Below are positions 9,094-64,000 of a stretch of 64,000 bases of DNA, in pieces. The stretch covers positions 10,168,001 through 10,232,000 of the forward strand of contig CM119377.1 of NCBI GenBank assembly GCA_051294905.1, written 5' to 3'. Positions within the stretch are counted from its first letter, which is position 1; each line of letters starts with the position of its first letter. The notes below the pieces were generated by a model, which saw only the letters and a program-made list of their open reading frames with translations, was not told where the DNA came from and ran no database searches. A program made the translations under genes and the position numbers. The stretch is from Botryllus schlosseri. Lineage: Eukaryota.

Positions 9094-9304
9094 TTCCCGG
9101 AAACGTTGAGTTTCATCGAATTCCTACTTTCGTGTACGATTTGACCGCTGATTCATCTTTGTTAATGGCGCAGTGGAGTTAATCGCAGATGTCGATCTAT
9201 CGTGGTTAAACTTAACTTTCTATCGTTGATTATGTCATCACGGAGAAGGTATCCGCACGGATATAGGCTACTGAATTTACTTACGTCTAATTGGGTTCAG
9301 AGAA
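9094..9304. promoter_or_regulatory. STAT-type sites: tandem pair plus one
   Basis: TTCCCGGAA 9094, TTCATCGAA 9112, TTCAGAGAA 9296. Confidence 0.4.
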
Positions 9305-19567: not shown

Positions 19568-21357
19568 ATGTCCATACATCTCTTACCCACCGACCAAAAT
19601 TCACCGTCGCCACTTCAATTCATTACAGTTTCGGATCATTCTCACGATTACTTTGTCACAATCAACCGCGATCCAGCAAACACTGGACCAACTCGAGCCA
19701 CAGGCATTCGTGAAGACTCGAGCCTAGAAAAGACACCTGAAAGGCAACGGAGTACTCCTGTCGTGGAATCAGAAATAGCTGGCGACTCGGAATACTCGCA
19801 TGTCTCCAGTGATGAAATCGCCCTGCCTAAAGAAAGCTATAAACTAACGGAGGACTCAATCCGCAAGTTGAAGTCGTTTTGCGGGCGAAACGGGGACCAG
19901 ACTTTGGTTGATACCGTGTACTCCTCTCCCGATAACGTGCGGCTGGTCAACGACCTCGCGAGAGTTCTGGAGAGGGTGGAGGAATGTCCCTGGTACTGGG
20001 GCGAGGTCGGTCGTCAGGAGTCTAGCAGGGTCCTGTCCGGGACGAGCCCGGGGACATTCCTGCTGCGCTTGAGCAGCGACCCAAAGTAAGCATTTTTATT
20101 GAATTTGATGCAACATTTGCGGCGTTGTTGTGCATGTTCAGTGCATAGATCTCATACAATTATATAAAGATTGGTCAAAGATAGTCACCATTGCTTCTCA
20201 AGTAATAGTATAGAAGCAACGACGTAAACTTTTACTCAATTACAAGTATAATTAGCGATGTCCAAGACACTTAAAATGACTACAAGTGGAAGTAGAAAAT
20301 AAAAGGTCAGAAAAGAACCCGTGTAACTTGTTTCAAAAAGTAGATTTGCAAAGCAATTAATCGTAAGCGGCTATATACTTCCAAAATTTCAAGATTTCTT
20401 ATCGCGACCACTTCGTAATAACTAATGGGCCACTCTTGCAATCTTCGAAAATACATTCCGTTACAATGATACAGGAACAATTTGCACGCGGTGGAATCCC
20501 CGTATGCCCACTGCCCAGCATATATTAGGGATTTCATTCCATGCTGTATCATTATCACTGTACCTTTAAAGTATATTATTATACATTTGGATTGGAGTAT
20601 TTGATTATATTAAGCTTAATGGTGTAGAAATATGCACCTGAATAGGAGAATTTGGTTGTATAGTAACTTTAATCGTGTACAATTTTGTACTCATTTATAT
20701 CAACTCAAATATAGGATTAAGCCGAATGAAAGGAAATTAAACAAACTTAATCTAAACGTGCACTTGACACTACATGGTACCTAAATCTCTGCCGTCGTGT
20801 CCTCATTCACGTGTGACGATATGAGTCAATACCAAACAATCACCAGTGCCCCCTTTTGCAGATATCTCTTCAGTATTAGCGTGAAGACAATAGTCGGCCC
20901 GATGAGCATCCGAATCGTGTACGAAAAGGGGTATTTCCGATTCGATTCTGAGTTCACCAGAGCCCAAAGGCAGGCGAGACATTCCGCGCCCAACGGGCGC
21001 GGGGGACATCCCAACTACCTGCACAAGACCACAAAGAAATTTCCTTGCGTCATCCACCTGATATTATACCATACGAGACATTTGCAATCTTCTACAGAGG
21101 ACTCGCCAAGTCCAAACGCGGACGACCGCGCCGACGGGCATTTCATGTGTTACTGGCCCTCTAGAAACGGTAATCGTAAGGAAATACCAGTGTTGCTCGC
21201 TACACCTCTGCCTAAAAAAGGATATTTTCCATCTCTTCAAAATCTGTGTCGCGCGGCGTTGAGCAGAGAGCATAAACTTTGGCGGTCCGACAACGAAAAG
21301 GTTCTCGTCCACACGTCACTGCGAAGGTTTATCGCGCGATATCCTTATCCTGTTTAA
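19568..21357 (+). CDS. SOCS-A: suppressor of cytokine signalling, SOCS2/CISH-like (SH2 + SOCS box). Core exons 19568 (or acceptor 19629)-20085 and 20862-21357
   Basis: ESS-SH2 start LARVLERVEECPWYWG...GTFLLRLSSDPK; donor AA|GTAAGC at 20086 joins in phase 2 to TTTTGCAG|A TAT (KYLFSISVKT...IRIVYEKGYFRFDS...FPCVIHLI); BC-box PSLQNLCR; C-terminus RFIARYPYPV*. Confidence 0.92.
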
Positions 21358-24790: not shown

Positions 24791-27262
24791 AAAACCACAA
24801 ACAACAATAACCGGTCCTATACGGAAGTGTCAGCCTATTGAACTGTAGCTCAGCATCGAATTTGTACAAGGGATTTTTCGTGGTCACTGGTCATAGTTTC
24901 GCGGGAATTTGACGCTTTTGGCGTATAGTTAAGTCGAATCTGCATGATTCGCAGCCTTCCTTCCTTCACATTACAAATTTGAGTTCACAGTATTCGTGCA
25001 CGAAACACAGAATATGAATTGAGAATTCGTACTTCGTAGTATACTATTGCAGAGCGGAGCTGACCTATATTTTGTGTACAATTGCATAGTATACTCCGGA
25101 AGGCAGTTCCAGTTTTATTCAATCCCCACACAATAATTCTAGATATCCCTGCCCACTGTCAATATATAACTAATTTGTCGTAACGGGTAAGGTGACCCAT
25201 TTCTGCCGTCCAAGGTATATTTGCATCGATCCTGTACTTCTACATCTCACGGTAATGATTTATTATGAATAGCGCAGTCAGCTGGAAGATGAACTGGATA
25301 CTAAGAATTACACTCTTAGCCACACAGTATTGTTGTGAATAGTTTTCATAACAGGACTATCAATATTGACCAATTCATATTTGTAGAGAATACTATCGCA
25401 TAGGTGAATAAACAAAGTCGAACAATGGACATTGGCGGTCACTAGAAATGATGAACGCTCGGAACGATAAATTCGGCAAACATGAGTAGAACGCGGCGTT
25501 ATTCCTTGTCATGATTCACAGCACGCCTTGCCATCCGGAGGAGATGCTATAGGAAGCATTCCTTTCCGTTTACAAGGCGTAATGAGCGAGACGCCGGTTT
25601 GCATCAAAATTGAAAACACATTGGCTTCCGCGGGGTAACATTGTAGCAGCAGAGTGTCTTGCAATTCAATATCCGATACCTGTATGGCCTTGGCCGTATA
25701 TGCCTTTACCGGCGCCATCGTTATTGTAGCAAGGACGCAAGCATGGACAAATCTCGAAAGTTTTAATGTCGACACGTTATGCCGTTCCACAGATATCATT
25801 GAAACTCTCGCGACAGCGAAGTGTGAACGTAAGCAAGTTGATCGTGCAACCCGCTGTTGCCATAGATCACGATTCGCACTCTGCAATTAGCGCTTTCAAC
25901 GATTCGTATGCCTTAGCAATCATATTCATTTGCAGGCCGACTATTTTGAAAATATCGGCATTATTGAATAAGCCGCCAATTTTCATTGCTACTGTCACTT
26001 CTCTTTTTTCTGACTGTCCAGTATCCTAGATTTTCATTTCTGCGGAAAGGAGGTCTGCGAAGATTCGAGAAGATCATATGCACATTCGCCGTTTTCCAGA
26101 ATATTCCGTTATACCAAATCATACGTCAACCAGCTACGTAATAACAAATTAATGATGGTATACGACAAGCCGTACTATAAACGTGACAAAATGACGCCGT
26201 CTATCTATTCAACACTAAATATCACAGCATTTACACTGCGCATGTGCGCCGGTGCTCGGGTGCTCGTATACGACGATCGCTCTAATCGCAGTATTCGTGA
26301 AGATATACAATTGATCAACCAATTATTTTCATTACTTTTCTTTTCTCGGCAAAATTATTTTCATTGGTAGCAAAATTGGGAAGACATATTTCATAGTCTA
26401 TCGTTCAGGTAGTCAATATATTAACTGTTGTGTCCTTCAAAAATTCTTTCCACTGGATGTTTCAAGGATATATCTAGCTATGTGAACTGTGACGGCCCAT
26501 AGACTTTCATAATATACACACTGATCAAATTGATTCGATATGGTAGTATACAACCGAAGCCATACCTACCTCGTTAGCAATATGATTTTTCACGAAATAT
26601 AATATAATCCGGACACCTTTATTCGTTTATACCTCCCCCTTCCTCAGCCGGCACGATTACATGGATTCACTGGAATCGAATTTTTAGTATAATAGTATTT
26701 TATTACCTCGATTTTACGGTTTCTTTCCATCTTGTGAATCGCCAGTCATTAGAACTTTGACTCATGGGGTGTTTAGATTGCAGCTGATATTGTCCTAAAA
26801 TTCATGCCATAGTAAGTGATATTTATGAAGCAAACAGCGAGGCCAGGAATCAGTATCGGAAGCGCGACGCCTCTCTCTCTCGTTTGCTTTTTTCAACTTG
26901 TTCATGCTGTGGTATATAAATTGACGTCAGTGTTACCTACTCTACAAAAGCTAAACGTCTGCGCAAGCGAAAAAGCCGGCAGATGTCTTGTTCCAGGGAT
27001 GGTATCACTATGATGATAGTTGAACGTGTTATGTATTGTGGAAGGTGGTACATTGTGGTGGTTAAGCTTATAAGTCATTTTGATCAATAGTTACCATCGC
27101 TGTAGTTAAGATGAGATGAGACTACGAGATGAGGAAATAGCTAAAATATGTCATGAGGTAACTAAAAGTGAGAGATCTCCATTTATGTTATCGTCTCATA
27201 TATCGATACCTTTTGACAGATTCTAACTATAGATTTATATACAAAGCCAATAGTTCTTCGCG

Positions 27263-30213
27263 ATGAGCCCGAATCCCGAAGCCATGGCCTCAATTCCACA
27301 CTCAAACCGAATCGAGTACTTACCGGATACGAAACATATTGATGAGGGATTTGCTAACAGACGCCCATATCCCGAACCAACGCCAGTACAGCGACAAGTC
27401 ACAGACGCAGAAAGATCTTGCGATAAACATGGAACGAATCCACATCTTGCCAACACGAGAATCAATATGCCCAAGAAAGGTTACAAATTATCAGCGGACT
27501 CTTATCGCAAGCTGAGATCATATTGTGGACATAAAGCTGCGGACGCTGTATCTTGTACGCGCGACCATATATTTAATGAACTGGCGAAAGTGCTGGAAAG
27601 GGTAGAAGAATGCCCCTGGTACTGGGGCAATTTGAGCGGTCAGGATTCAATAAAAATACTTGCCGGAACTTGCCCTGGGACTTTTCTCCTGCGTCTGAGT
27701 AGCGATCCAAAGTAAGCAAATTCCTTATTATAATTATAACAGTTGAACAGTGAACACATTCCCATATATTTATACTAATATGCACCTGACTTATATGGAT
27801 GATTAGCTTAATAGTTGTGGGCGAAACTAAAAACATACATAACACTGAACTTTTGACATTCAAGGTTGGGCTTGACTGTTTAGTTATCTGTATTTCATCA
27901 GCATTCGCGATTTACGTTGCCACCGGCGCTCCCACCAAACCGCGAGCGTAGTCTTTTCCAAGACTTGCCATTCGCGACTCGCGTCGAAAGCTATAGAAAG
28001 TATTAGCTCAAAACCACCAAGATTTATCGAATTTCGAGTATCATTCACAGTTCATAGACAGCTCAAAGCCCGAAATCTTAACCCATGTGGCGTCGACACC
28101 GTGAAGGTCATTGCGCACGCTCCAGGAAAGATATTTAAGCGTTAATAATGACAAGTGTCAATCAAAATTAAATGGATATTCATTATTCAATCTGTGTGTT
28201 GACATTTCTGACTGTATGACACAAATTACGATGTGGTGTTAGTCAAATATGTGACTGCACTATGCACATTGTGCACAAGATATTGAATTGATGCGATTGA
28301 CCATACCATGCCGATTCGATTTAGTAAACATGCCTTAGCAGTCGGTTTGATTTGTTTGTCGGATAAGTTGCGCGGTCAGGTTAGTCCTTTCACTGGCGGT
28401 TCTTTCTAAGAATATGGGTTTATCAAGATAGTGCTCTTTCTTCGTGCGTTATCTCACATATTTGAGGATGCTTGTGTCGATTCTCGGGACTGTGGGCAAT
28501 TTAGAATTCGTCGTAACGCGATGACGGGCGACGTGACATTTAACGTGACTCCTGCTAGATATTATTGACTTTATTAGGCTACCCGTTCCGGAGGTCGTAG
28601 GTTTTTCGGGAGCCGTAGTCTAGATATAAAACATCGCGATGAGTGGTAGCGACTCTGGCACTTCATTTCAACAACGTACTTCCACCAGTGATCTCCTCAA
28701 TTTTCGCCAGAGTATTACCGTATATCTTACCGAGAACTATTTCCGGCAACGTCCAATACTAAATCTATATTTATAATCGACTATAAGGTAAATTTTCCGC
28801 CCGTACATATCATGTAATACCGTGTCTCATATCATTACACGCACTTTAATAAGACTGCTGCAGCGCAACAAGTAGGACGATTCCTTGAACCATGCAATCA
28901 CGTATGGCTTCTAATACAGCTTCCAGCCATTTCGGCGCATTCTATCTGCGAAATTCATCGAAGGCGCTTGATTAGAAATTTCTCTGTTTCGATAATTACC
29001 ATGTTATCCGCATGCGCGCATTAGCAATCGAATCAAATTAGAGACATGAGCAATTGAGCATTGACATGATGCTAATATAGGCTACCTTCGTTTGTACTTG
29101 TTTTTTGCCTTTGCCCATTCCCAGAAACAGTTATTGACACGGATCCGCGCCGGAACCGTGTTATGTAAGAACGGCACAAAATACCTCAATCAGCGCTCTC
29201 GGGTTATCCGCGAATTTCTCAGAATGAAATGACGCTATCGTCGATAAAAAGTAGAGAGTGAAATTCCAAATTTATGTAACACGAGCTTCGAGGAAAAGTT
29301 CTTATCGCGGTCCCAATATTCATGCGCGATTTAAACAGCTCTCAAATAATCGCTATTGCATCATTGAAGCGTAGTGTGTCGGCTAATGTGCGTGGCCTTA
29401 GCTGCAGTGCTTCGAGTTTGCCAAATGAACGAATAGTTCGTGTTGATCATGAACATGTGATTTGCGATTATATATCATTGTCATTATGTTAAGATCGCAT
29501 TACTGGTACACAAAATAGGTTAGAGGTTACTGTGACATCATTATATTCCTACCTCTTACATATCTTGCCACGCCCCACTTATAACCCCTACTTCACACAA
29601 TATTCTGGATTATTGAGAACTAGAAATGAACTAAATATCTCTGTTTCATTACAGATATATCTTCAGCCTCAGCGTGAAGACAAAGTACGGCCCCACCAGC
29701 ATTAGAATCGTTTACGAAAGCGGCCATTTTCGATTCGACTCAGAACTAACGGACGCGCAAAGACAGGCGCGAGATTCGATTGCCAGCGGAAACGCTGCCG
29801 GCAGTCGCAAGGGTCATCCGAACTACGTGCACAGAATTACGAAGAAGTTCACTTGCGTCATCCATTTGATATTGTATTACACGAAGCATCTACTGCAAAC
29901 AGACGGCGAATTGGGAATAACGGAAAACGGGGCAGCTGACGAAGACACGGCAGCCGTCGTCAGTCGAGGCGACAGGCCGGGTGAACTTTTCATGTGCTAC
30001 TGGCTTACGAGAAGCGGTCGCCGCGAAATACCTGTGCTGTTATCTACTCCTTTGCTAAAAAGAAAACTATGTCCCTCGCTTCAAAATATATGCCGCGCCG
30101 CTCTGAGCAAAGAGTATGAACTTTGGAAGCCCAGCTCCCGCGAAGCGGCTATTCGTAAAGACTTGCCGACGTCACTACAGAGGTTTCTCGCGCAATATCC
30201 GTATCCTATTTAG
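27263..30213 (+). CDS. SOCS-B: suppressor of cytokine signalling, SOCS2/CISH-like. Exons 27263-27711 and 29655-30213
   Basis: LAKVLERVEECPWYWG...GTFLLRLSSDPK; donor AA|GTAAGC at 27712; acceptor TTTCATTACAG|A TAT (KYIFSLSVKTKYGPTSIRIVYESGHFRFDS); SOCS box PSLQNICR...LPTSLQRFLAQYPYPI*. Same intron position and phase as SOCS-A. Confidence 0.93.
28404..29295. promoter_or_regulatory. Intronic cluster of six TTCN3GAA (STAT/GAS) sites in SOCS-B
   Basis: TTCTAAGAA 28404, TTCCTTGAA 28881, TTCATCGAA 28954, TTCCCAGAA 29118, TTCTCAGAA 29216, TTCGAGGAA 29287. Confidence 0.7.
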
Positions 30214-32587
30214 AACGAGCACAAGCCGAACCAGCACATCTTCACTTTGTAACTTATGTTCTATTTTTATTTATTCGCCCGATTTGTTGGTTGAATCTGA
30301 AAGCGCTCGGCGCTGCGTTGAAGAGTTTCCGTTGTAAACGTGTTAATAACTTTGTGACGTCATATTGTATCCGTGAGCACAGGTAACATTGCAATACACT
30401 GCTGTTCACATGTAATATGTTTCAGTGCCACTTTTGTGCTAGTACTATCTTCGTGAAAGTATCTGATATTCAATTGCAATACCGACATGCATTTTGTTCC
30501 ATTTTCGCACTCAGATTCGCAAAACTTCTTTTGTTGCCATAATGAAATTCTTGACCTTACCGTAGCGGGTACCTGTCTGTCTGTTCTAACCGGGGTTCGG
30601 ATACTTTGTCTAGCTAGGCCAGCAGGATAGGCCTATATGCATAGTTGCACACTAGTTCCATAGTATAGTTAGCGAGGATATCAGGCAACATGAACCCTGC
30701 AGTAGAGTGTAATGAAGCTTTTTATCCATGGTTTCCATAATAGTAGACCAACCATGTCGCTGAGCTATGACAAAAACGATAATTCAGCATAGCATTATTA
30801 TATTTAATATTGATAATGACATGACGTGACAACGTTCCTTTTATCATCTCATCAGACTGGTACACAACTATTCAGTATGCCGTAAATTGCGGAAGGTGAA
30901 CATTACTGTACAAGTAATGTTCAGCTGCAGGTATACAGTTTACCAGTGTACGAACAAACAACTTCCGAGGGCGTTATCAGAATGAAAACTAGGAAAAGAC
31001 AAAAATTGAGCCTTAGTTAAAAGGTATGCACTTACAGGCTGATCAAACATAGACAGAGATATACAATATACATCTAAAATACCATGAGCTTATGAAAAAC
31101 ATTTATGCAAGACAGCATTATGTGCCGAACGAAACCGGAGACAAGCGGAAATATTGCACTCGCTTTAACCGTAGGAAAGTAACGGACTATAGGCTACTCC
31201 TTTTCTAAAAATATATATCCTGGGGTCGCGTGTGCAATTAGGAATATACCGCCGGATAACGCCATAAAACTAATTTTAATTCGCTATAAAACGAATTATA
31301 ATTCTCCATAAACTTTAAGAAGCTCATCTCCGTTAACATCTGGTTCTAAAGAATCTATAGGCGCATATATATATTCTATATGTAGTACAAACATCATTTG
31401 CGTAAATGGTGCGTCAAGGTCAAACATGAATGCCTTGCATGTCATATACGATAGAAACCAGTTTCGGTGCTTACTCTGCGGAAGCAGAACATATAGACTC
31501 AATATTATAGAGCTATAGCTCCGCGCTCAGTGATTCCTAGTATACGGATATACTATTTACCAGCAGACAAACACAGCATCTGTGAAATTTTTTACAGGGA
31601 AATGAAAATTGCATCGTAAGTGATGAAATATATAGCTAACTAAGATAAACCGACTCCGGAATAGTATTGGTTGATAATGCATATAAAGCAGTGGTTCCCA
31701 AACGGTGGGGAACGGTGGGGCCCACTGATGGGGAATTCAATGGTTTCTGGTGGGGAATAGACGCATTTGTTCAAAATCATATACAGGACAGTCTACAAAT
31801 TCACGGAGACACATACGCAATTACCGTTAGTTAACTGCTCTGGAATGTATGTATCGAATAATATTTTGCGTGTTGTTCACAAAACCTCATTTCTAACTCT
31901 GGATGGCCAATCATGGCGTCACAAACGCATCCAGCACGACTAGTTTGACGTGAAATAACGCTTTTGCGAAATTTTGACCGTTACTGGTATTGGTTCAGAA
32001 TACGTTTTATGTTGCAGCTATAGGCGATTGTCTTGCGTACTGGTGTGGTTGTATGTCTTGTGTAGTCAAACCAGACATGGGGTGATTACCTTATGAATGT
32101 AATCGATTGCGATTACGATTACTTCGGAATCACGCGATTACGATTACGATTACGATTACAGCAAAATCAGGAAGTAGTCGATTACGATTACGATTACATT
32201 GTAAAAGTAATCACGATTACTCACGATTACATTTGTTTTGCTTCTTAGAACTATACTCTTAAATAATATATTGGAAGACAATGCAAGGATTGCGATGAAA
32301 AGGCCTAATGAGATATCAACTCTCTTCATACATCATGCGTCATTTGCTTCATACGTCATAATATACCAATTGCCCAATTTTATAGTGGATGATTTATCGC
32401 ATCCAACAATTTGCATTATTGCCAGGTCTTTACCTGCCGCACCCCAAATTCCTTAATAGGGTGGGGAACGTGCTCGAAGGGGACTCAAAATTATTTCGTA
32501 AACCAACATAAATTATAGAGTACATTCGAGAATTAAATTAATTCTTGGACATGTTCTTCGAGCTTTGCGTTTCAAATGTCTCTAGTA

Positions 32588-33067: not shown

Positions 33068-34239
33068 CTCCAGTAGATAGCTGGGTTTGAAATGCATACC
33101 TCTTCCCCTCAAAAAAACATTCATAGGCTATTTTATGCGAACAATCATTTCGGAGCCGGTTATTACCGCGCCACGATCACACAACACACCAAAAGACATG
33201 CAGTTTCGGACAACACGAAACTCCACGGGATGTGATACCAAAGAAATACCTTGACCGAAACTTAGGGTATTCGTCCATTGTCAATAGCCGCGCTGGGTGG
33301 GCGTGACTAATAACTCCTGTCCTTCCAATCTGGGCCCACAATGCAAATGTCACCCGGCGCATCCACAAAGGAATATAGCCATGACAATTTGTGTGTGCGT
33401 CTCACAAAAGGTATTCTTTTAGTATGCTACGTTTGGGCGAGAACAATATCTTTTGATTATACAACAGACTGGAGGTCGCGAATTAACAACATACAATAAA
33501 GTAAATATAATACCATACCAGATGCTACGATTATGAATTACGTGCCCCAGCTCTACAGGTAAATCTAACACTCTGGGCTGAGAGAGGTTATAAATGAATA
33601 GTAATATAATGCAATTACGAATATTATTGACGAATTCAGTTTTAAAAATTAACCAACGGTTGGACAGGGGAACGAAGTGCTGTTTTGGCTGAATTGCTGA
33701 TTCTAGCTACAACCCACGCTAACATGTCAGGCTATATAAGCGGATGGTTATGGCGGCAGGTCCAAATGCTAAGTAACGAACTGTGACATAACGATTGACG
33801 CCCGTTTCAAGTAGTTATATGAGAATGAGATATAGTGAACATAAAAATTCTGCCTTCTACTTAATACTTATGCTGCGAGCTGCTGTTACGAGAAACGGCT
33901 AAACACGGCTCGGATATGATATATATCAGCAGCTGTTTATTTGTAATGCTTCGTTGTGGAAACTGCAATGTTTTATTCGACGAGTACAAAATTCCGAATC
34001 TTCGTCAGGTGCACGTGCGTACGTAGGCCTCCTTCTCGCCAAGCAGCAACGGTAAACTGCGTTTAACTAAGCACAATCAAACATCAAAACATAAGTTACT
34101 ATTTGAAACTATAGGCAGAGTGGCGATCAATATCCTGCTGCGAGGTAGGGGCTTCTGTAGTGTATTGATAACCTGATATACACCACGGGAGGTGTTCTTA
34201 CAATAACACTACATTCGCTTAAACTCGCTTCACCCGGCC

Positions 34240-35148
34240 TTGCAATTCACAATAGAAAAAGAACGCAATAACTCATTATCATTTCTGGACGTATTAGTTG
34301 AAAAGCGCAATACCAACAAATTTGAAACGTCTGTTTTCAGAAAACCGACATTCACAGGCCAATACCTTCGCTGGAATTCATTTAGTCCTCGGCGCAGAAA
34401 AATTAACCTCATAGGCACACTCGTGCATAGAGCGTTGATGATATGTTCGGGTAACAAACTGAGTTTAGAACTTGACTACATCCGAAAAATCTTACTTGAT
34501 AATGGTTACCCTGAACACGTCATCAGCCGCGGCATGGAGAGGAAATTAACGCAATTCAACGCAGAAAAACGAACAGAGCCCACCGCACGAACAATAAAAG
34601 ATGTTTATATCCATCTACCTTGGATTGGCCCCATTTCCACCCGCTTTGAAAAACAATTGATTTCTGCTGTCGGTAAATGTTACGATACAGTCAAAACCAA
34701 TGTGATTTTTACAACAACACAACTGCTCCCTTCAACACGCAAAGACGTGCTTCCTGCACTTCAACAAAGTAATGTAGTGTACGAATATAGGTGCCACTGT
34801 GATTGTGGCTACGTGGGAAGAACGTCAAGACGTCTGCAGGACCGCATAAACCAACATGTCCCCAGATTTATCAGAACACGTGCGTCACGCGATGTGAAAA
34901 GCTCACCCTTAACTCATCCACTTAAGATTGATGCTGATCGATCAAAGGCAATTAATTCTGCCATCGGCAAACATTTGTTGGATAATCCGATTTGTGCGAA
35001 TAATTATCGAGACGACCGATTTCGAATCGTAGGTCGAGGCCGTTCACAATTCCATTTGTGTGCCTTGGAATCAACTTTTATCAAAATACACCAACCAAAA
35101 CTCTGTCAACAAAAGGAGTTCGTGTATCACCTAAAAATAGTACATTGA
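34240..35148 (+). CDS. PLE ORF fragment: reverse transcriptase C-terminal/thumb region + GIY-YIG endonuclease
   Basis: LQFTIEKE...LSFLDVLV...VFRKPTFTGQYL...NGYP; VVYEYRCHCDCGYVGRT...INQH...SAIGKHL...LESTFI. No internal stops. Confidence 0.9.
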   Translation: MQFTIEKERNNSLSFLDVLVEKRNTNKFETSVFRKPTFTGQYLRWNSFSPRRRKINLIGTLVHRALMICSGNKLSLELDYIRKILLDNGYPEHVISRGMERKLTQFNAEKRTEPTARTIKDVYIHLPWIGPISTRFEKQLISAVGKCYDTVKTNVIFTTTQLLPSTRKDVLPALQQSNVVYEYRCHCDCGYVGRTSRRLQDRINQHVPRFIRTRASRDVKSSPLTHPLKIDADRSKAINSAIGKHLLDNPICANNYRDDRFRIVGRGRSQFHLCALESTFIKIHQPKLCQQKEFVYHLKIVH

Positions 35149-43900: not shown

Positions 43901-46900
43901 ACTGCCGAAGCATCACGCTTCTGCCGATCGCCGCTTCATACAACAACAGGGCACTCGTATATCTGAGGCTTGAAAGATGGGAGGTGAGGACGTGCTCGCT
44001 AAAATGATATTCAGACTTTTGATCGGGCGTGTGTGTTGTGGATTTCGAACGTATTCAAATTTTGTGGTTTCCTGTGGGCCAGATCAAATTTGATTGTGTT
44101 CGATTGAGAGGTGGTCATCGTCTGCACTCAAGTAGAAGTAGAATTGACGTCGTAAATTTCTGTTACAACACGAAAGGAAATGGCGATTTCCAAGTAAGTT
44201 TTCAAGGCCTAGCTTTGCCTAAAACTGCAAACTGTCGAGCACAAATGGAAGTAAGCACTCTAAAGGCACTCATGGCCACTTGAGTGAGTAGTGTGAGTAG
44301 TGCAAATAGTCTAAACCTACTTGAGTGCTCTGAAAAGTAGAAGTACATTCTTACTGACCACCTCTGGAGGTGATAGAGTGATGAGAAAGAACTCGCTACA
44401 TTACAAATGAAGTTCGATATTTTTTGTCCAAAAATTTTAATCCCGTTTTGATTCCGACTCTATACCATTTTGTACGTTATCTGCTGAATAACACCCTAGA
44501 AAAATGCTGTAGTGTCAGACTGTACAATAAGCTTGAACCGAATCTTCATTATCAGGACGCGATAAAAGATTGCAACACCGTACTGCAGTTCGAGGGCGAA
44601 CAAAATAACTTGAAGGCTATGCTGCGGCGAGCGACTGCGCACAAATCTATGAAACGCTACGCTGAAGCCGCGGCGGACGTAGAATTCGTGCTGAGCAAAG
44701 AGCCGAACAATGCACGTGCCAAAGGTATTTTGGAGGACGTTGCGAAATTGAGGGAAAAGGAAAATGTGTCGAGAGAGAAGGACAGGCCGGAGGCGAAAAA
44801 AGGGAAAAAGATGGTGATCACGGAAGTCGATTCGTCCGATGAGGATACGGAACCGGAAATTAAGCCGGTAAAAACGCAGTCGGAAAAATCTGAAGTTGTG
44901 ACGAAAGCGAAAGAAACGAACGAATCGAAAGCGGAAGAGGTCTCGTCTATTTCTACTGTGTCTCCGGAGTTCCCCGTCAAAACTGCAGAGTTAAAAACGA
45001 AGGCCGGCGACCTGTTCAAGTCCGGCAGGTATGGTGACGCAGGTGAACACTACACAAAAGCAATCGCCAGCATGTCGTCGTATGTGAAACCGGGCGGCAC
45101 AGACCCGGGACACACCGCGGCACTGGCGGTACTGCACAACAACCGGGCCGCGTGCAGGTTAAAGCAAGGAGATGACAGGGCTTGTGTTGCTGATTGCAAC
45201 GAAGTGTTGAAGGTGAAAAAGTGGGACGCGAAAGCCTTGATGAGGCGCGCGATGGCGTATGAAAACATGGAGAAGTACGCGAAGGCGTGGGCCGACTATC
45301 AGACCGCGTACGGCATGGACAGAGGCAACGTGCTGGCCCAAAATGGCGCCAACCGCGTCGGACAGCATCTGCGTGATATACACGGCAGTCGGTGGAGGGA
45401 GAAAGTTCCTAAAATTGAAACGCCCCCAATGCCTGCTTTGGGTGATATGCACAAATATGCAATACCTGACAATAAAGAGGCACCGAAACCTGTAAATATT
45501 TCCGATGTTCGGAAGGATGGGGAGAGTACAGTAGGTCCCGCGGAAAATCTCAGGGCGCCGTCAGGAATTATCAAAGAGGGTAAGAAGCAGAAAACCAAAG
45601 TCGACACCGTAGCTCCCGCAGAAAAGCTCAGTGTGCCATCGGAACTTCCCAAAGATGGTAAGAATCAGAAAATGAACAGTGATGATGTGAACGCCGTCGC
45701 TCCCACGGAAAATCTCGGCACGCCATCAGAATTTTCAAAAGAGGGCAAGAAGCAGAAAAGCAAAAAACGGAACAGGCCTAAATCGCCCCGAAAAGTGGAG
45801 GTTCCGTCTCCGACAAAGGAGGAAGCCGCAATTGAAAGCAAAAAAACAAAAATACGGCAGGACCTCTTCCAAAAACTGAAAGCAGACGGTAACGAGAACG
45901 TAAAGCAAGGCAAGTACGATGATGCCATCGATTGCTACACCAGATGCTTGACGCTGTGTCCGAAAGAACCGGCTAGTTACACTAACCGGGCGCTGTGCTT
46001 TTTGAAACTGAAAAAACATGTGTCCGCGGTCAACGACTGCACAGAGGCTATAAAGCTAGACCCGGTCAACACGAAGGCGTATTACAGACGCGCTCTGGCG
46101 CGTAAAGCAGAGGGCTACCACGGTGACGCGCGCCGTGATATTACTAAACTGCTCGAGATCGATCCGGGCAATAAAGCAGGACGTGCGGAGCTGGAGGCTT
46201 TAAAAAAATTGATGGGCAATACCAAGAAGGAAGTGAAACCGGTGCATAAAAAGCGGATGGTCATCGAGGAGGTGGACAGCAGTGAGAGTAGCGACGAGGG
46301 TGAGTTTGTGCTACCCGCCGAAGATAGCCCGGAACGAACCGAAGAGGTTAAAATCAAGGTTATTGGAAACGAAAATAAGACTCTAAACGCGACCGCACCG
46401 CTCCGGAAAACTGGCGATAACGAGTCACCAAAATCTGCAGATAACGAGTCTACAAAATCCGCCAAAATCACTGATAACAAGCTATCAAAAGCTACAGATA
46501 ACAAGTCTGCAAAATCTGCCAAAGTCACTGATAACGAGTTGGCCAAAGCTGCAGATAACAAGTCTGCAAGATCTGCTGAAGTCACTGATAAAGTGTCAGC
46601 AAAATCTGTTGAAACCACCGATAGCGAGTCGACGAAATCTGTCAGAGCCAGACTCTCGGCTGACAGGCAATTGACACCTTACGAGTTTGGGCACTTGTGG
46701 AGCGCGATTGCCAGCAAGAAGAACCACGACGAATACAAGGCCCTGCTGGGTAGAATAAGGCCCGAACAGTTACCGGCGCTGTTGAGTAACAAAATCGACG
46801 ACCACGTGATACGGATGGTGTCGCAGGTGGCTAGGGAGCACGCGACGAAAAGCGGGGATTGCCGGTACGCGTACGATTTATTGCGTTGCTTGACCAAAGC

Positions 46901-47042
46901 AGAACGATTCGGAGTCGTGGCTATGTTCTTGTCGGATTCGGATAAAAGAATCCTGAAAGATACGTTCGACGCTATTCGTGGTGACGATTCCTGCGTTGTC
47001 ACGCAGGACGATATTAGCGAATTGGAAAAGAAATATGCGTAA
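40944..47042 (+). CDS. SPAG1: Sperm-associated antigen 1 (TPR co-chaperone with RPAP3-like C-terminal domain), ~1095 aa. Exons 40944-41033, 41097-41239, 41289-41494, 43120-43265, 43690-43795, 43874-43983, 44556-47042
   Basis: DYAYIEKCSNEK|ELVRILRALRSGREGFYPDL; LPPVRG; DYRSWEKFNVDEEC; three TPR triplets (REKEKGNEAFKSGDY, LKTKAGDLFKSGRY, LKADGNENVKQGKY); TPYEFG...LLSNKIDD...AERF C-terminus. All splice phases consistent; total 3288 nt. Confidence 0.93.
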
Positions 47043-56861: not shown

Positions 56862-59800
56862 TCAATATTGCTTATCCCAGTTGAAAATATATTTCAATGG
56901 CCTGTTGTGGATATAGTTTTCTAGATTTTCGATGAACCTTTTTTCGACAAGACCACGCCCTCCGGCTCCACTGACATGTGGTGTGATTGTAACATCTTTC
57001 AAATCCCACAACGGTGACTCCGGCGGTAAAGGCTCTTTTTCAAAAACGTCCAAGAATGCTTTTTCAATCCATCCGCTGTTGACTGCCTCGACAATGCTTC
57101 TCTCATCAATAATATCACCTCTACCTATATTGATAAATCTGATTGGTTTACTGGAACAAACCTTCAGAACGCCATTTGACAGAAGTCCCTTTGTATGAGA
57201 GGTGCTGGGCAGTATGTTGCAAATGTAATCACAAGTTTGCAAGAGTTCAGGCAATTCACTGCTAGTATAAATTTTCTTCACATGATCGACTGGTTCCCAA
57301 GTAGTTTTCAGGCCATACACTGTCATACCCATTGAGTTGCATGCTTTTGCCACGTCTTTCCCGATATCTCCTAGACCCAAAATTCCAATACTCAGTTTTG
57401 ACAGGGTTCGGTACCTTAAATGAAAGGACAACCACTTGAGGTGAAACAGCATTACATTATACATTACATACGGCATCCCTATGCTACTGAGGAGGATTTG
57501 TCCCGAGTGAAAGTTAGGAGAGAGGGAGAGTAGAAGAATATGGTGTGGTCAGGCAATACTACTGTACCATAGACTGCAATATCTGCAGATGTGGCCAATG
57601 TTGGTAGTTGGCTACTTATATCAGAAGTCTCAAATTTGCTCGAGGGGCATTTTCCTGGTTTTTGATGACGCCAGGGGCCGCAGAATCAATAATTGGGGGC
57701 TGAATGTCTTTTCAAGTAGGCCTTATTTGACGGGAGCAGACACCTATCGAGAAGATGTGATTCACTAAGTACCAATTCATGCTCTGCTCGAAAAAAATCT
57801 CATTTTTAGATATTTGAATAGAATACATGCGCTAGAGTGGTAGTAAAAATGAAGATCTGAGAAGTACCAGGGTAACTAGTTTCTGAAAGCTTATACACTC
57901 AGGCATAATATGCTATATACTTTTAGCAGTTAATTGGAGGTGATTAAGTTTCGAAATTGTCAGATAAGACTACCGGTAATGTGAAATGACATTCTACTTC
58001 ACGAAAATGCAGACACTCTAGATTTCCCTAAATAATTTGAGTAGAACTGGAAGTGTTCTGTCAACAGAAGTACTGGAGTAGGCCTAGGCGGTTGCCAGTA
58101 AACTCGCCCCAAAGTAAATTCGGCACATGAATTAATAACATAATTATACTATTATTAAGTGATTTGGATGTCAGGGTATGCGTAGATCGCGTAATCACGC
58201 GAGATAGCGCGGATATTCACGGGGACCGAATTTACCGACGGCCGAATTCACTGGTTACTCGGTCAATTCTGCCCTCGGAGAATTTTTTATAAAAATGTAT
58301 TACCAACTATTAATGTGAATTAATGTCATAATTATATTATTATCAAGCGATTTGGAGAACAGGGTATGCGTATAAATATATATATGTATATATATATGCC
58401 GATGTTTACGGGGCCGAATTTACCGACAGCCGAATTCAATCGGTATATTCGGCCCTAGGAGAACATTGTATTACGAACTAATAATGTGTATTATATTACA
58501 TAATTATAATATTATCAAGTGATTTGGAGGTTAGGGGTTAGGTTTAGGATTAGGGTTAGGTCTGGGTTGTAATGACTCGAGTCATGACTCGACTCGAGTC
58601 AGACTCGAGTCACGATTTTTTTATGACTCGACTTGACTCGAGTCATTTTCTTGAAATGGGAAAATGACTCGACTCGACTCGAGTCAATATTTGGATTGAC
58701 TCGACTTGTACTCGAGTCATTACGCATGACTCGACCCAAGTCATTGACTCGGCTTATTTTATATGACTTGAAGATGAAGAAATTTGCGAATCTTAATGGC
58801 TAGATCAACGCATTCGACGAATTCTGCCGACATCGCTATTTGTCACCACTGCTTTCGTTGCACTTGTCTGATATCAGATATGCCGCCGTAAAAACAACAG
58901 AAAATGATACATAGTAGCAATGCATTGTACAAAATCGTCCAGTGATGAAGAGGTAATAGATCCTCCGCAATTAAAGTACTCAAGACTTTTCAATTATACA
59001 AGCAAACAATTGAATCAAAGTTCAATTAGAGCCAATGAAATGACTCAGATGGTGAAGAGACTGATAAGCTCATGTGTATATTTGAAGGCGATGATTCTTT
59101 GCATTTTGGGCGACTTGAAAGAATGAGTATTCAATGCTCTTCAGTGTGGTTCAAAAATGCTTGTCAATTCCTGCATCTAGTGCACTAGTGGAACGTGTAT
59201 TCAGTAGATGTGGATTCATTCTACGGCCATGCCGCTTTAACATATTTGAGGATCTCCTTTCCACATTAGTATTTTTGAGGTGTAACCTCTTGATTTGATC
59301 TGCTGTCTGTGAAAACACACAATGCCCCTCGTCCATTTGACGTTTTGTTAGGTATGTGCATTGTGCACGTGAGTAATAATGAATGGCTAATGTTGTGTGA
59401 TGTTTGTACAATATGGCTGTTCTAAAATAACTTCTTTTTTATTTTACTGGGTGGTTACTTGATAAATTTGTTATGTTGCATAAAAGGAACACTGAATCTG
59501 GCTTAATTTGAAAAAAGTGGAATCAATGATGTGAGATGAGAATATTTTGGATTTGAATATAAATGGAGTATTTTAGTGAGAAATTCTTTCATATAATATA
59601 ATTACATAGTAGTAAGCCGACTGTTTTTTCATATCCAAAACATTCTACTCTAATAACTTCACTTTTTCTAGTTGGAATTGAGTCAAATTTGCTATGAATC
59701 ATATTTTTACACAATGTAACAATATCATGAGATAGCCGGTAAAATTCGAAAATCTCTATTTGTAATTAGTCTAAAATTTTCTTTCATAACATTGCTTTCT

Positions 59801-62660: not shown

Positions 62661-64000
62661 TCAATCGGCACCTTCTCCCGGGGATCTCACGTCATCAATC
62701 TTCAAAATCATACGCACAAGCTGTGTAGCTAGAGAGATCTGTTGCTTCTTGCCCATGAGCGTTTCAAGAACGTGCTGCTCTTTCATGTCGCAGGTGCCTT
62801 TGTTCAAGCAGTCGATTCCGAGATTAGAATTTCCTTCGTTGACTTGCCTCGAACGGACTGCGGATAAGGTCTGAATCGGATTGAGGCCACTGTTTTCAGC
62901 CAGAGCCAAGGGAACGGTTTCCAAGGCTTGAGCGTAAGAACGCATAGCATACTGCTCCAAAGTCGGATTTAATTCGGCCTCTTTTGAAACAGAGATAGCA
63001 CATGCAATTTCACATGCACCACCACCGTACACAACTCTGTTATCGCGGACCAAGTTACGAATAACACACAGAGCATCGTGGATAGAGCGTTTCGCCTCTT
63101 CGCATATCATTTTGTTACCTCCCCTCAAAAAGATGGTGACGGCCTTTGTGTTCTTGCATTTCTCGATAACAAGCATTCTATCTTTCGTCGTTCCAAAAGA
63201 GATTTCACGGACAATACCGGCGTAACCTAATTTTTCCGGTGTCAACTCCGAAAACCTTGGAACGATTCGGCCACCTGTTGCGATAGCGATAAGTTCGATT
63301 TCCGGTCCACCGACCCATCGTACCGCAGGTAACTCGTTTTGAAGAAGCAGGTGATTAGCTTCATCGTCAAATCCCCATTGGCAAATTGCTATGCTCGCGC
63401 CGGTGTCTTTCACTTGCTTTACCATTTCTGCAAACTTTTCTTTTTCGTAAGTCTGCAACTTTTTATAATCTTCAACTGATGTAACGTCGAGCTTATGCTT
63501 GGTTTTAGGCTTTGGCGGTTCAAAGGGACATGTCAAGATTGCGAGTTTCGCATCTTTGATCACTTTCGGCATTTGAGGATGGCTCATATCTTTATCGACA
63601 AGGACGCCCCTGATTAGCTGACTGTCCTCTAATTTACCACCGTTCTTCGATTCAACTTTGATTAATTCAAAGTCCACGTCTTTACGGTCGAAGTCCGCGA
63701 CAGCCATAACTGCATCGACTGCGATTTTTGCGAATTGCCTGTGACATTTATTGACGATTTTTGATCCAAGAGTCGTCATGGCTACTTCAACCAAATTTTC
63801 ACAGTCCTTGGGATCGACTTGGAAAACATCTGCAATTTCATCAAGTTTTTTCAAAGCAACATGCATGGCAGCTTCATAGCCATCAGCAACTCGTATAGGG
63901 TGGATTCCACGGTCGAGAAGTTGCTCCGCTTGTTCTAACAGAGCACCGGCCAACACCACAACGCCAGTGGTACCATCTCCAATCTCATCATCTTGAGATT
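62661..64000 (-). CDS. CCT5: T-complex protein 1 subunit epsilon, 3' part (5' end beyond the window)
   Basis: [34 protein letters not shown]...[25 protein letters not shown]...[14 protein letters not shown]...[20 protein letters not shown]. Frame is open to the window edge. Confidence 0.97.

What the first reader, a model, noticed from the sequence alone, without database searches (positions are those of the whole stretch)
28404..29295. Dense STAT response module inside the SH2-splitting intron of SOCS-B
Seen: six perfect TTCN3GAA sites in ~890 bp, five of them within 415 bp; three fit TTCYNRGAA. My rough chance expectation is ~0.3 sites per 900 bp. I saw none in the equivalent intron of SOCS-A. 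Known: SOCS genes are direct STAT targets forming a negative feedback loop. Inference: an intronic cytokine enhancer specific to one paralogue, implying regulatory partitioning: SOCS-A uses upstream clusters, SOCS-B this intron.
Basis: partly seen in the sequence, partly recalled or inferred. Interest (0 to 1): 0.7.

Follow-up and report, generated by a model that had tools for sequence, protein, structure and literature searches.

The report
Conserved STAT-site cluster in tunicate SOCS intron
An intron of a sea-squirt SOCS gene, which encodes a brake on cytokine signalling, holds a dense cluster of STAT-type binding motifs that recurs in the same intron of three other tunicates despite complete sequence turnover, so it is very likely the feedback switch that turns the brake on.

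Summary
Six perfect TTCN3GAA sites lie at 28404-29295, inside the 1943-bp phase-2 intron (27712-29654) that splits the SH2 domain of SOCS-B. SOCS-B is the second of two tandem CIS/SOCS1-3-class genes. Shuffles predict 0.64 sites in this intron (0/5000 reach 6), and the rest of the window is at chance (24 vs 22.9).

- **Same intron in other tunicates:** 7 vs 1.1 expected in L002, 8 vs 1.4 in L003, and 23 vs 3.3 in Styela clava.
- **Pooled with Clavelina:** 47 vs 7.1 (z=15), the top of 64 control palindromes.
- **Specificity:** only the N3 spacing and only perfect palindromes are enriched.
- **Positional conservation:** two window sites (28404, 29287) sit in the only intronic blocks that still align with L002, at 71-79% identity against 68% for the exon.

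Clavelina carries its clusters in the gene's flanks instead of this intron.

The best reading is a STAT-responsive feedback enhancer, analogous to the Drosophila Socs36E introns and the vertebrate Cish GAS clusters. It is a new member of a known kind.

The claim that SOCS-A uses upstream clusters fails (2 vs 1.7 in 5 kb). Regulatory partitioning remains untested. STAT binding itself is inferred, not shown.

The parts
19568..20085 (+). SOCS-A coding exon 1 (ATG to donor; N-terminal region plus first third of the SH2 domain)
   Evidence: Frame and WYWG...FLLRLSSDP; Pfam SH2 E=1.1e-4; donor AA|GTAAGC; the spliced product is 337 aa with no stop
20086..20861 (+). SOCS-A SH2-splitting intron, 776 bp, phase 2, no TTCN3GAA
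   Evidence: 0 observed vs 0.22 expected
20862..21357 (+). SOCS-A coding exon 2 (rest of SH2, SOCS-box-like tail, stop)
27263..27711 (+). SOCS-B coding exon 1 (MSPNPEAM... to ...FLLRLSSDP)
   Evidence: (SH2 E=1.2e-3); the N-terminus matches transcript-derived P0001
27712..29654 (+). SOCS-B SH2-splitting intron, 1943 bp, phase 2. It has no ORF of 50 aa or more across the cluster, no Rfam match and no repeat copy elsewhere in the window
28404..28412 (.). GAS site 1, TTCTAAGAA (fits TTCYNRGAA); positionally conserved with L002 position 224 (TTCCAAGAA)
28404..28504 (.). Conserved non-coding block 1 (about 71% identical to L002 224-324). It holds GAS site 1, a conserved TATCAAGAT word (28421-28429) and a GATA-type word GTTATCTC (28448-28455)
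   Evidence: BLAST E=1.2e-5; alignment A1
28881..28889 (.). GAS site 2, TTCCTTGAA; not alignable to L002
28954..28962 (.). GAS site 3, TTCATCGAA; not alignable to L002
29118..29126 (.). GAS site 4, TTCCCAGAA (fits TTCYNRGAA)
29216..29224 (.). GAS site 5, TTCTCAGAA (fits TTCYNRGAA); the aligned L002 sequence is not a full site
29238..29310 (.). Conserved non-coding block 2 (about 79% identical to L002 1509-1576). It holds AAGTAGA, AAATTCCAA, the PAR-bZIP/C-EBP-like word TTTATGTAAC (29271-29280), GAS site 6, and TTCTTATCGC (a GATAAG-type word, 29299-29308)
   Evidence: BLAST E=2.7e-7; alignment A2
29287..29295 (.). GAS site 6, TTCGAGGAA; positionally conserved with L002 position 1556 (TTCTTGGAA), with a 1-nt indel on each side
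29655..30213 (+). SOCS-B coding exon 2 (rest of SH2, linker, SOCS box, stop)
   Evidence: SOCS_box PF07525 E=0.002, 18.8 bits, below the 23.5-bit cutoff

Best explanation
The stretch 28404-29295 is a homotypic cluster of STAT (GAS-type, TTCN3GAA) binding sites. It forms an intronic cis-regulatory module of SOCS-B, a tunicate CIS/SOCS1-3-class gene. Proposed mechanism: cytokine-receptor/JAK activity phosphorylates STAT. STAT dimers then occupy the dispersed perfect palindromes in the intron, probably together with factors that read the conserved GATA-like and bZIP-like words beside sites 1 and 6. This raises SOCS-B transcription, and the SOCS-B protein (SH2 domain plus SOCS box) damps JAK/receptor signalling, closing a negative feedback loop. 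Shown here: the sites exist, they exceed chance, only the N3 spacing and only perfect palindromes are enriched, the same intron is enriched in three other tunicates although the intron sequence has turned over completely, and two sites lie in phylogenetic footprints. Inferred: that STAT is the binding protein, that the module activates rather than represses, and that SOCS-B is the gene it controls. The module is ancestral to the duplication that produced SOCS-A and SOCS-B. SOCS-B kept it, and SOCS-A, with a 776-bp intron, has none.
For: (1) Excess in the window: 6 vs 0.64 expected in the intron, 0/5000 shuffles. The window-wide scan gives P about 0.001. The rest of the window is at chance, 24 vs 22.9. 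(2) Specificity: TTC-Nx-GAA with x=0-2 or 4-6 gives 0 sites, GAA-N2-TTC (heat-shock type) gives 1, half-site density is not raised, and one-mismatch variants are at background, 6.7 vs 6.1 per kb. (3) Replication fixed in advance, in the same phase-2 intron after SSDP(K/R): L002 7 vs 1.08 (1/5000); L003 8 vs 1.40 (1/3000); Styela clava L004 23 vs 3.32 (0/1000), against 20 in the other 31.6 kb of that locus. (4) Pooled over five introns: 47 vs 7.1, z=15, rank 1 of 64 control palindromes. (5) The introns are otherwise unalignable and contain no internal repeats, so the sites are independent occurrences. (6) Sites 28404 and 29287 lie in the only two intronic blocks that align with L002, at 71-79% identity against 68% for exon 2. 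(7) The host gene is a SOCS: SH2 domain, SOCS box, and a clade with Ciona, Phallusia, Styela and Clavelina SOCS1/2/3/CIS genes. (8) Precedent: Socs36E introns hold multiple STAT92E sites and drive the STAT-GFP reporters (PMC3772120). Clusters of conserved plus non-conserved STAT sites predict STAT92E enhancers; for example the dome intron has 5 sites in 700 bp, 2 of them conserved (PMC2877871). Cish, Socs2 and Socs3 are direct STAT5 targets through GAS motifs (PMC3378893). Ciona has one JAK, two STATs and one socs1/2/3/cish gene (PMC3296744).
Against: There is no binding, chromatin or expression data for any of these species; everything is sequence statistics. In Clavelina lepadiformis the SH2 intron is only marginal (3 vs 1.0, 69/1000), and the excess sits in the 5' and 3' flanks, so the intronic location is not universal. 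Only 2 of 6 window sites are positionally conserved. The extended motif preference is weak: pyrimidine at position 4 is 60% vs 44% in all TTCN words (P=0.002), but this does not differ from background full sites (P=0.59). The window cluster was picked after the fact. L002 and L003 are partial introns from unnamed Logan assemblies, and L003's orthology rests on exon 1 and the intron position alone. The DNA-binding specificity of tunicate STATs has not, to my knowledge, been measured.
Confidence: 0.7

Rival explanations
1. Shared enhancer rather than paralogue-specific partitioning. The intronic GAS cluster is a STAT-responsive module, but it drives both tandem genes. SOCS-A's start and stop lie only about 8.6 and 6.4 kb upstream of it, so the two paralogues are co-regulated.
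For: SOCS-A has no GAS excess of its own in its intron, in its 5 kb upstream or in the A-B intergenic region. Both genes are on the same strand within 11 kb. STAT92E enhancers can act over tens of kb and across other genes (PMC2877871).
Against: Nothing direct. The module lies inside SOCS-B, and in species with a single gene it serves that gene. The A and B proteins have diverged to 57% identity, which is compatible with separate roles.
Confidence: 0.3
2. The palindromes are bound by a protein other than STAT, or by STAT acting as a repressor or insulator. Candidates include a zinc-finger repressor with an overlapping TTCNNNGAA-like specificity, as BCL6 has in vertebrates. The module would then be selected, but it would not be a JAK/STAT-inducible enhancer.
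For: The conserved feature is only the 3-N3-3 palindrome. The STAT-typical inner preference (TTCY..RGAA) is weak. No trans-factor data exist.
Against: The enrichment recurs specifically at SOCS loci of five tunicates and at a fish CISH locus. This matches the one pathway known from flies to mammals to feed back on SOCS genes through exactly this motif (PMC3772120, PMC3378893). Heat-shock-factor spacing (N2) is absent.
Confidence: 0.1
3. Chance or compositional artefact. The window cluster is a post-hoc pick from many windows, and the sites have no function.
For: At a window-wide P of about 0.001, a few such clusters are expected per genome.
Against: Three independent tests fixed in advance, in other species, each reach P of about 1e-3 or less in the homologous intron. 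Pooled z=15, rank 1 of 64 control motifs. The enrichment is spacing-specific with no half-site excess, no repeats and no tandem arrays. Two sites lie in footprints.
Confidence: 0.03

Closest known systems
Drosophila Socs36E intronic STAT92E site clusters (source of the 10xSTAT-GFP/luciferase reporters)
   Same: Multiple perfect TTCN3GAA sites inside an intron of a SOCS gene, read as the negative-feedback input of JAK/STAT (PMC3772120). The architecture of dispersed sites, some conserved and some turned over, matches STAT92E enhancers; the dome intron, for example, has 5 sites in 700 bp with 2 conserved (PMC2877871).
   Different: Socs36E belongs to the SOCS4/5 class, and flies lack the SOCS1/2/3/CIS class (PMC3296744). 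The two modules are therefore in non-orthologous genes and introns, which means parallel or very ancient logic rather than inherited sequence. STAT92E also uses N4 sites. Here N4 is not enriched except mildly in L003 (8 sites). Function is proven in flies and only inferred here.
Vertebrate Cish/Socs2/Socs3 GAS motifs bound by STAT5
   Same: Same gene class (the tunicate gene is the pre-duplication SOCS1/2/3/CIS gene), same motif and same feedback logic. Cish, Socs2 and Socs3 are among the very few genes truly controlled by GH-STAT5 (PMC3378893). The paddlefish CISH-like locus shows 3 promoter-proximal and 6 3'-flank GAS sites, like the mouse Cish promoter and 3' flank.
   Different: The vertebrate clusters are in the promoter and 3' flank, not in an SH2-splitting intron. 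In paddlefish CISH-like the whole SH2 domain from WYWG onward is in one exon and the introns hold no GAS site. Cish-type closely spaced tandem pairs, thought to support STAT5 tetramers, occur in paddlefish (sites 14 bp apart) but not in the window, where the closest pair is 71 bp apart.
Clavelina lepadiformis SOCS1/2/3/CIS locus (L006)
   Same: Orthologous tunicate gene with the same phase-2 SH2 intron and a locus-wide GAS excess (19 vs 6.7, 0/1000).
   Different: The excess is in the 5' flank (6 vs 1.4) and the 3' flank (5 vs 1.0). The SH2 intron itself is only marginal (3 vs 1.0), so the position of the module is evolutionarily mobile.

Membership tests
STAT-responsive GAS-cluster module of a SOCS gene (negative-feedback enhancer) | Several perfect TTCN3GAA palindromes clustered beyond chance | tested here: met
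   6 vs 0.64 expected in the intron (0/5000); window scan P about 0.001; only motif of 64 controls with a cluster of 6
STAT-responsive GAS-cluster module of a SOCS gene (negative-feedback enhancer) | Located in or next to a SOCS-family gene | tested here: met
   Inside the 27712-29654 intron of SOCS-B
STAT-responsive GAS-cluster module of a SOCS gene (negative-feedback enhancer) | Phylogenetic conservation of the cluster and/or of individual sites | tested here: met
   Homologous intron enriched in L002, L003 and Styela clava; pooled 47 vs 7.1, z=15; sites 28404 and 29287 positionally conserved. Clavelina carries flank clusters instead
STAT-responsive GAS-cluster module of a SOCS gene (negative-feedback enhancer) | STAT protein occupies the sites in vivo or in vitro | not testable with these tools
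   Needs CUT&RUN/ChIP, DAP-seq or EMSA with the tunicate STATs
STAT-responsive GAS-cluster module of a SOCS gene (negative-feedback enhancer) | JAK/STAT-dependent transcriptional activity that is lost on site mutation | not testable with these tools
   Needs a reporter assay with JAK inhibitor, STAT knock-down and site mutagenesis
STAT-responsive GAS-cluster module of a SOCS gene (negative-feedback enhancer) | The genome encodes JAK and STAT | not tested
   Not in this window. Ciona has 1 JAK and 2 STATs (PMC3296744). Unchecked scan notes s1-234273 and s1-291542 mention STAT and JAK genes elsewhere in this genome
SOCS family, CIS/SOCS1-3 class (host genes SOCS-A and SOCS-B) | Central SH2 domain | tested here: met
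   Pfam SH2 on the exon 1 ends: E=1.1e-4 for A (22.7 bits, above the 21-bit cutoff) and E=1.2e-3 for B (19.3 bits, just below it because only the first 30 profile positions lie in exon 1). The spliced orthologue P0001 gives SH2 E=4.5e-9
SOCS family, CIS/SOCS1-3 class (host genes SOCS-A and SOCS-B) | C-terminal SOCS box | tested here: inconclusive
   The SOCS-B tail hits PF07525 over 36 of 39 positions but at 18.8 bits, below the 23.5-bit cutoff. The SOCS-A tail gives no hit. The Ciona savignyi homologue passes at 25.6 bits, and the tails align with it
SOCS family, CIS/SOCS1-3 class (host genes SOCS-A and SOCS-B) | Groups with the tunicate SOCS1/2/3/CIS gene and vertebrate CISH rather than SOCS4-7 | tested here: met
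   Best named hits are Ciona savignyi SOCS2 and fish CISH. The tunicate clade has 98/98 support. Its members are named SOCS1/2/3/CIS in Phallusia and 'suppressor of cytokine signaling' in Ciona intestinalis
STAT5-tetramer-type tandem GAS pair (Cish promoter type) | Two GAS motifs, or one GAS plus a near-GAS, a few to about 20 bp apart | tested here: not met
   The closest perfect pair is 71 bp apart. One-mismatch partners at -10 bp exist for only 2 of the 6 sites and are at background density
Heat-shock element (HSF site) | Alternating nGAAn/nTTCn units with 2-nt spacing | tested here: not met
   TTC-N2-GAA 0 and GAA-N2-TTC 1 in the intron

The most novel reading that the evidence does not exclude
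The SH2-splitting intron of the single pre-vertebrate SOCS1/2/3/CIS gene has been the seat of a JAK/STAT feedback enhancer since before the divergence of stolidobranch ascidians and this lineage. It has been maintained purely as motif density, 3-4 GAS sites per kb, while every alignable base turned over. After tandem duplication in this lineage one copy (SOCS-A) shed the module entirely and escaped STAT feedback. That would be a clean natural case of regulatory subfunctionalisation of a signalling brake. The about 0.9-kb fragment would also serve as the first JAK/STAT activity reporter for tunicates, as the Socs36E intron did for flies.
Probability: 0.3. Interest if true: 0.65.

Novelty: new member of a known kind. 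Interest (0 to 1): 0.5.

Why it matters
STAT induction of SOCS genes is textbook in flies and vertebrates. For tunicates, the sister group of vertebrates, I found no description of any STAT-responsive element. JAK/STAT is now being linked to Ciona regeneration by correlation only (PMC13588380). A compact, conserved GAS cluster in the lone SOCS1/2/3/CIS-class gene offers three things. First, it is a ready candidate for a pathway-activity reporter in electroporatable ascidian embryos and juveniles. Second, it is a clear example of an enhancer conserved as site density rather than as sequence. Third, the tandem pair in this genome is a test case for how a duplicated feedback inhibitor divides or loses its feedback input. 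It does not overturn any concept.

Tried and rejected
- **Repeat or transposon origin:** rejected. There are no direct, inverted or tandem repeats of note. The intron matches only itself in the window, and the Styela intron has no internal repeats.
- **Compositional artefact:** rejected. Half-site density is normal, other spacings are absent and one-mismatch sites are at background.
- **Structured RNA in the intron:** no Rfam match at E<=0.1.
- **Hidden coding exon:** no ORF of 50 aa or more on either strand between 28048 and 29322.
- **Positional homology of the middle sites (28881/28954 vs L002 686/756, similar spacing):** the alignment is poor, so no homology is claimed.
- **Extended STAT5-type motif preference:** weak and inconclusive.
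- **Homology between the SOCS-A and SOCS-B introns:** none.
- **Timing of the A/B duplication:** the tree leaves the order inside the clade unresolved.
- **Shared intron position with vertebrate CISH:** not seen in paddlefish.
- **Loci that could not be read:** contigs for P0002, P0021 and P0055 returned no DNA because the files are too large. P0025 and P0026 (Ciona, Phallusia) are not on record as genes.
- **Species names for the Logan runs and assemblies:** a paper search found nothing. L004 and L006 were named through cluster members.
- **GCCN3GGC (AP-2-like):** it ranks second in the pooled introns, but with 6 scattered sites absent from two species it was not pursued.
Full report
**1. The observation**

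A pattern scan finds 30 TTCN3GAA sites in the 64-kb window (23.9 expected). Five fall within 415 bp, and three fit TTCYNRGAA.

As a window-wide scan statistic, six sites in 892 bp occur in 2 of 2000 shuffles, and in 0.12% of random placements of 30 sites. Real-sequence controls point the same way.
- Of all 64 palindromic 3-N3-3 motifs, only TTCN3GAA forms a cluster of six anywhere in the window.
- In the intron, TTC-Nx-GAA with x=0,1,2,4,5,6 occurs zero times.
- The heat-shock-type GAA-N2-TTC occurs once.
- TTC and GAA triplets are not over-represented.
- One-mismatch variants are at background density, so only perfect palindromes are in excess.

No direct, inverted or tandem repeat explains the sites. 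The intron has no other copy in the window, no Rfam match and no ORF of 50 aa or more across the cluster.

**2. Gene context**

The window carries two tandem, same-strand paralogues.

| Gene | Exon 1 | Intron | Exon 2 | Protein |
|---|---|---|---|---|
| SOCS-A | 19568-20085 | 20086-20861 (776 bp) | 20862-21357 | 337 aa |
| SOCS-B | 27263-27711 | 27712-29654 (1943 bp) | 29655-30213 | 335 aa |

The two proteins are 57% identical. Both introns are phase 2 with AA|GTAAGC donors. Both cut the SH2 domain between ...FLLRLSSDP and K-Y(I/L)FS(L/I)SVKT. Pfam finds the SH2 start at the end of each exon 1 and a sub-threshold SOCS box in the SOCS-B tail.

A spliced transcript from a relative (P0001/L001, 317 aa) confirms the exon join and shares the MSPNPEAM N-terminus of SOCS-B. 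The nearest named proteins are Ciona savignyi 'SOCS2' (43%) and fish CISH. In a tree the window's genes fall in a well-supported tunicate clade that includes:
- the Ciona intestinalis 'suppressor of cytokine signaling';
- Phallusia 'SOCS1/2/3/CIS';
- the Styela clava and Clavelina lepadiformis homologues.

The genes are therefore duplicates of the single pre-vertebrate SOCS1/2/3/CIS gene described for Ciona (PMC3296744). The window's species is an unidentified tunicate.

**3. The conservation test**

I fetched every genomic relative the tools could deliver and counted sites in the homologous intron. The hypothesis was fixed beforehand, so these counts are unbiased replications.

| Locus | Species or source | Region tested | Observed | Expected | Shuffles reaching observed |
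|---|---|---|---|---|---|
| Window | unidentified tunicate | SOCS-B intron, 1943 bp | 6 | 0.64 | 0/5000 |
| L002 | Logan contig, SOCS-B-like | about 2.5 kb of intron before exon 2 | 7 | 1.08 | 1/5000 |
| L003 | Logan contig, more distant | 2.7 kb of intron after exon 1 | 8 | 1.40 | 1/3000 |
| L003 | same | 3.7 kb upstream of the gene | 5 | 1.36 | 30/3000 |
| L004 | Styela clava chromosome | SH2 intron 24976-31735 | 23 | 3.32 | 0/1000 |
| L006 | Clavelina lepadiformis | SH2 intron | 3 | 1.01 | 69/1000 |
| L006 | same | 5' flank | 6 | 1.36 | 2/1000 |
| L006 | same | 3' flank | 5 | 0.98 | 2/1000 |
| L006 | same | whole locus | 19 | 6.7 | 0/1000 |

L003's exon 1 ends at the same ...SSDPR position with the same phase. 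In Styela the remaining 31.6 kb of the locus holds only 20 sites. Its intron has N3-specific enrichment, no internal repeats and no residual similarity to any other species' intron. Clavelina is the exception: its locus is enriched overall, but through the flanks rather than the SH2 intron.

Pooling the five SH2 introns (17.5 kb) gives 47 observed vs 7.1 expected (z=15). This is far ahead of the other 63 control palindromes, the next being z=6 on six sites.

**4. Footprints**

Between the window and L002, exon 2 is only 68% identical at the DNA level and the introns are otherwise unalignable. Two collinear intronic blocks still align:
- 28421-28504 with L002 241-324 (71%, E=1e-5);
- 29238-29308 with L002 1509-1576 (79%, E=3e-7).

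GAS site 1 (28404, TTCTAAGAA) matches L002 position 224 (TTCCAAGAA) in register with block 1. GAS site 6 (29287, TTCGAGGAA) matches L002 position 1556 (TTCTTGGAA) inside block 2.

The blocks also keep GATA-type words (GTTATCTC, TTCTTATCGC) and a PAR-bZIP/C-EBP-like word (TTTATGTAAC). I read these, as inference only, as candidate partner sites. The four middle sites have no aligned counterpart.

Two conserved anchors plus turned-over sites is the pattern described for proven STAT92E enhancers. One example is the dome intron, with five sites in 700 bp, two conserved, and the others still contributing (PMC2877871).

**5. Mechanism**

The most economical reading is a homotypic STAT-site enhancer that closes the JAK/STAT-SOCS negative feedback loop. 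Activated STAT dimers would bind the dispersed perfect palindromes and raise SOCS-B transcription.

The sites are at least 71 bp apart and lack near-GAS partners beyond background. This argues for dimer binding at multiple sites rather than the Cish-type tetramer arrangement.

The identity of the binding protein, the sign of the effect and the target gene are inferred. The inference rests on the motif, on the host gene, and on precedent in flies (PMC3772120, PMC2877871) and mammals (PMC3378893). Extended-motif evidence is weak.

**6. The paralogue claim**

SOCS-A's intron has no site. However, its 5 kb upstream (2 vs 1.74) and the A-B intergenic region (1 vs 2.06) are at chance. The triplet at 9094-9304, about 10 kb upstream, is unremarkable. 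'SOCS-A uses upstream clusters' is therefore not supported.

The intronic module is present in Styela and L003, so it predates the duplication. SOCS-B retained it, and SOCS-A lacks it. Whether SOCS-A is now STAT-independent (partitioning) or borrows the SOCS-B intron 6-9 kb away (shared enhancer) cannot be decided from sequence. The tree does not resolve when the duplication happened.

**7. Comparison with the known**

Functionally this is the tunicate counterpart of two known systems:
- the Drosophila Socs36E intronic STAT92E clusters, which sit in a non-orthologous SOCS class (PMC3772120, PMC3296744);
- the vertebrate Cish/Socs2/Socs3 GAS elements (PMC3378893).

A paddlefish CISH-like locus fetched here shows three promoter-proximal and six 3'-flank GAS sites, none in introns. 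Its SH2 domain from WYWG onward is in one exon. The SH2-splitting intron and its module thus differ from the vertebrate arrangement, while Clavelina's flank clusters resemble it.

I found no paper describing a STAT-responsive element in any tunicate. The held library is incomplete, so this is not proof of absence.

**8. Verdict**

The STAT-module interpretation is well supported by replication across species, though biochemically untested. The claims about SOCS-A are not supported.

It is a new member of a known kind. It is of moderate interest, with practical value as a candidate JAK/STAT reporter for ascidians.

Noticed in passing
window 28421-28504 and 29249-29308: Beside the two conserved GAS sites, the footprints keep GATA-type words (GTTATCTC at 28448-28455; TTCTTATCGC at 29299-29308) and a PAR-bZIP/C-EBP-like word, TTTATGTAAC, at 29271-29280. 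These are possible co-factor sites that could give tissue specificity (for example blood cells).
   Followed up: partly
window 9094-9304: Three TTCN3GAA sites within 210 bp (TTCCCGGAA, TTCATCGAA, TTCAGAGAA), about 10 kb upstream of SOCS-A. Triplets this tight occur in about 17% of shuffled windows, so the group is not significant on its own.
   Followed up: partly
window 19568-21357 and 27263-30213: Both SOCS proteins here are short (337 and 335 aa). The Ciona, Styela, Clavelina and Phallusia orthologues are 696-913 aa with a long N-terminal extension spread over extra exons. This lineage has either lost the extension or the upstream exons were not recognised.
   Followed up: no
window 34207-35145 (+): A 313-aa open frame with no Pfam hit. 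Its C-terminal part looks like a GIY-YIG-type endonuclease motif (from memory), as in Penelope-like retroelements.
   Followed up: no
window 44385-47039 (+): An uninterrupted 885-aa frame with TPR repeats and an RPAP3_C domain (an RPAP3-like co-chaperone), in the window's GC-richest and most skewed stretch.
   Followed up: no
window 56865-57548 (-) and 62664-63998 (-): Exons of a D-2-hydroxyacid dehydrogenase family gene (2-Hacid_dh_C, E=1e-42) and of a TCP-1/CCT chaperonin subunit (Cpn60_TCP1, E=1e-138).
   Followed up: no
L007 3347-3592 and 9035-10202 (paddlefish CISH-like locus): Three GAS sites lie within 650 bp upstream of the gene, two of them 14 bp apart. Six lie in a 1.2-kb stretch of the 3' flank, and none in the introns. 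This mirrors the promoter and 3'-flank GAS groups reported for mouse Cish.
   Followed up: partly
L003 1-7099: TTC-N4-GAA is also somewhat frequent in this contig (8, against 3-4 for other spacings). N4 is the STAT6/STAT92E alternative spacing. It was not seen in the other species.
   Followed up: no
pooled SH2 introns (window, L004, L006): GCCN3GGC, the AP-2-type palindrome, is the second most over-represented control motif (6 vs 0.72 expected). The sites are scattered and absent from L002 and L003.
   Followed up: partly
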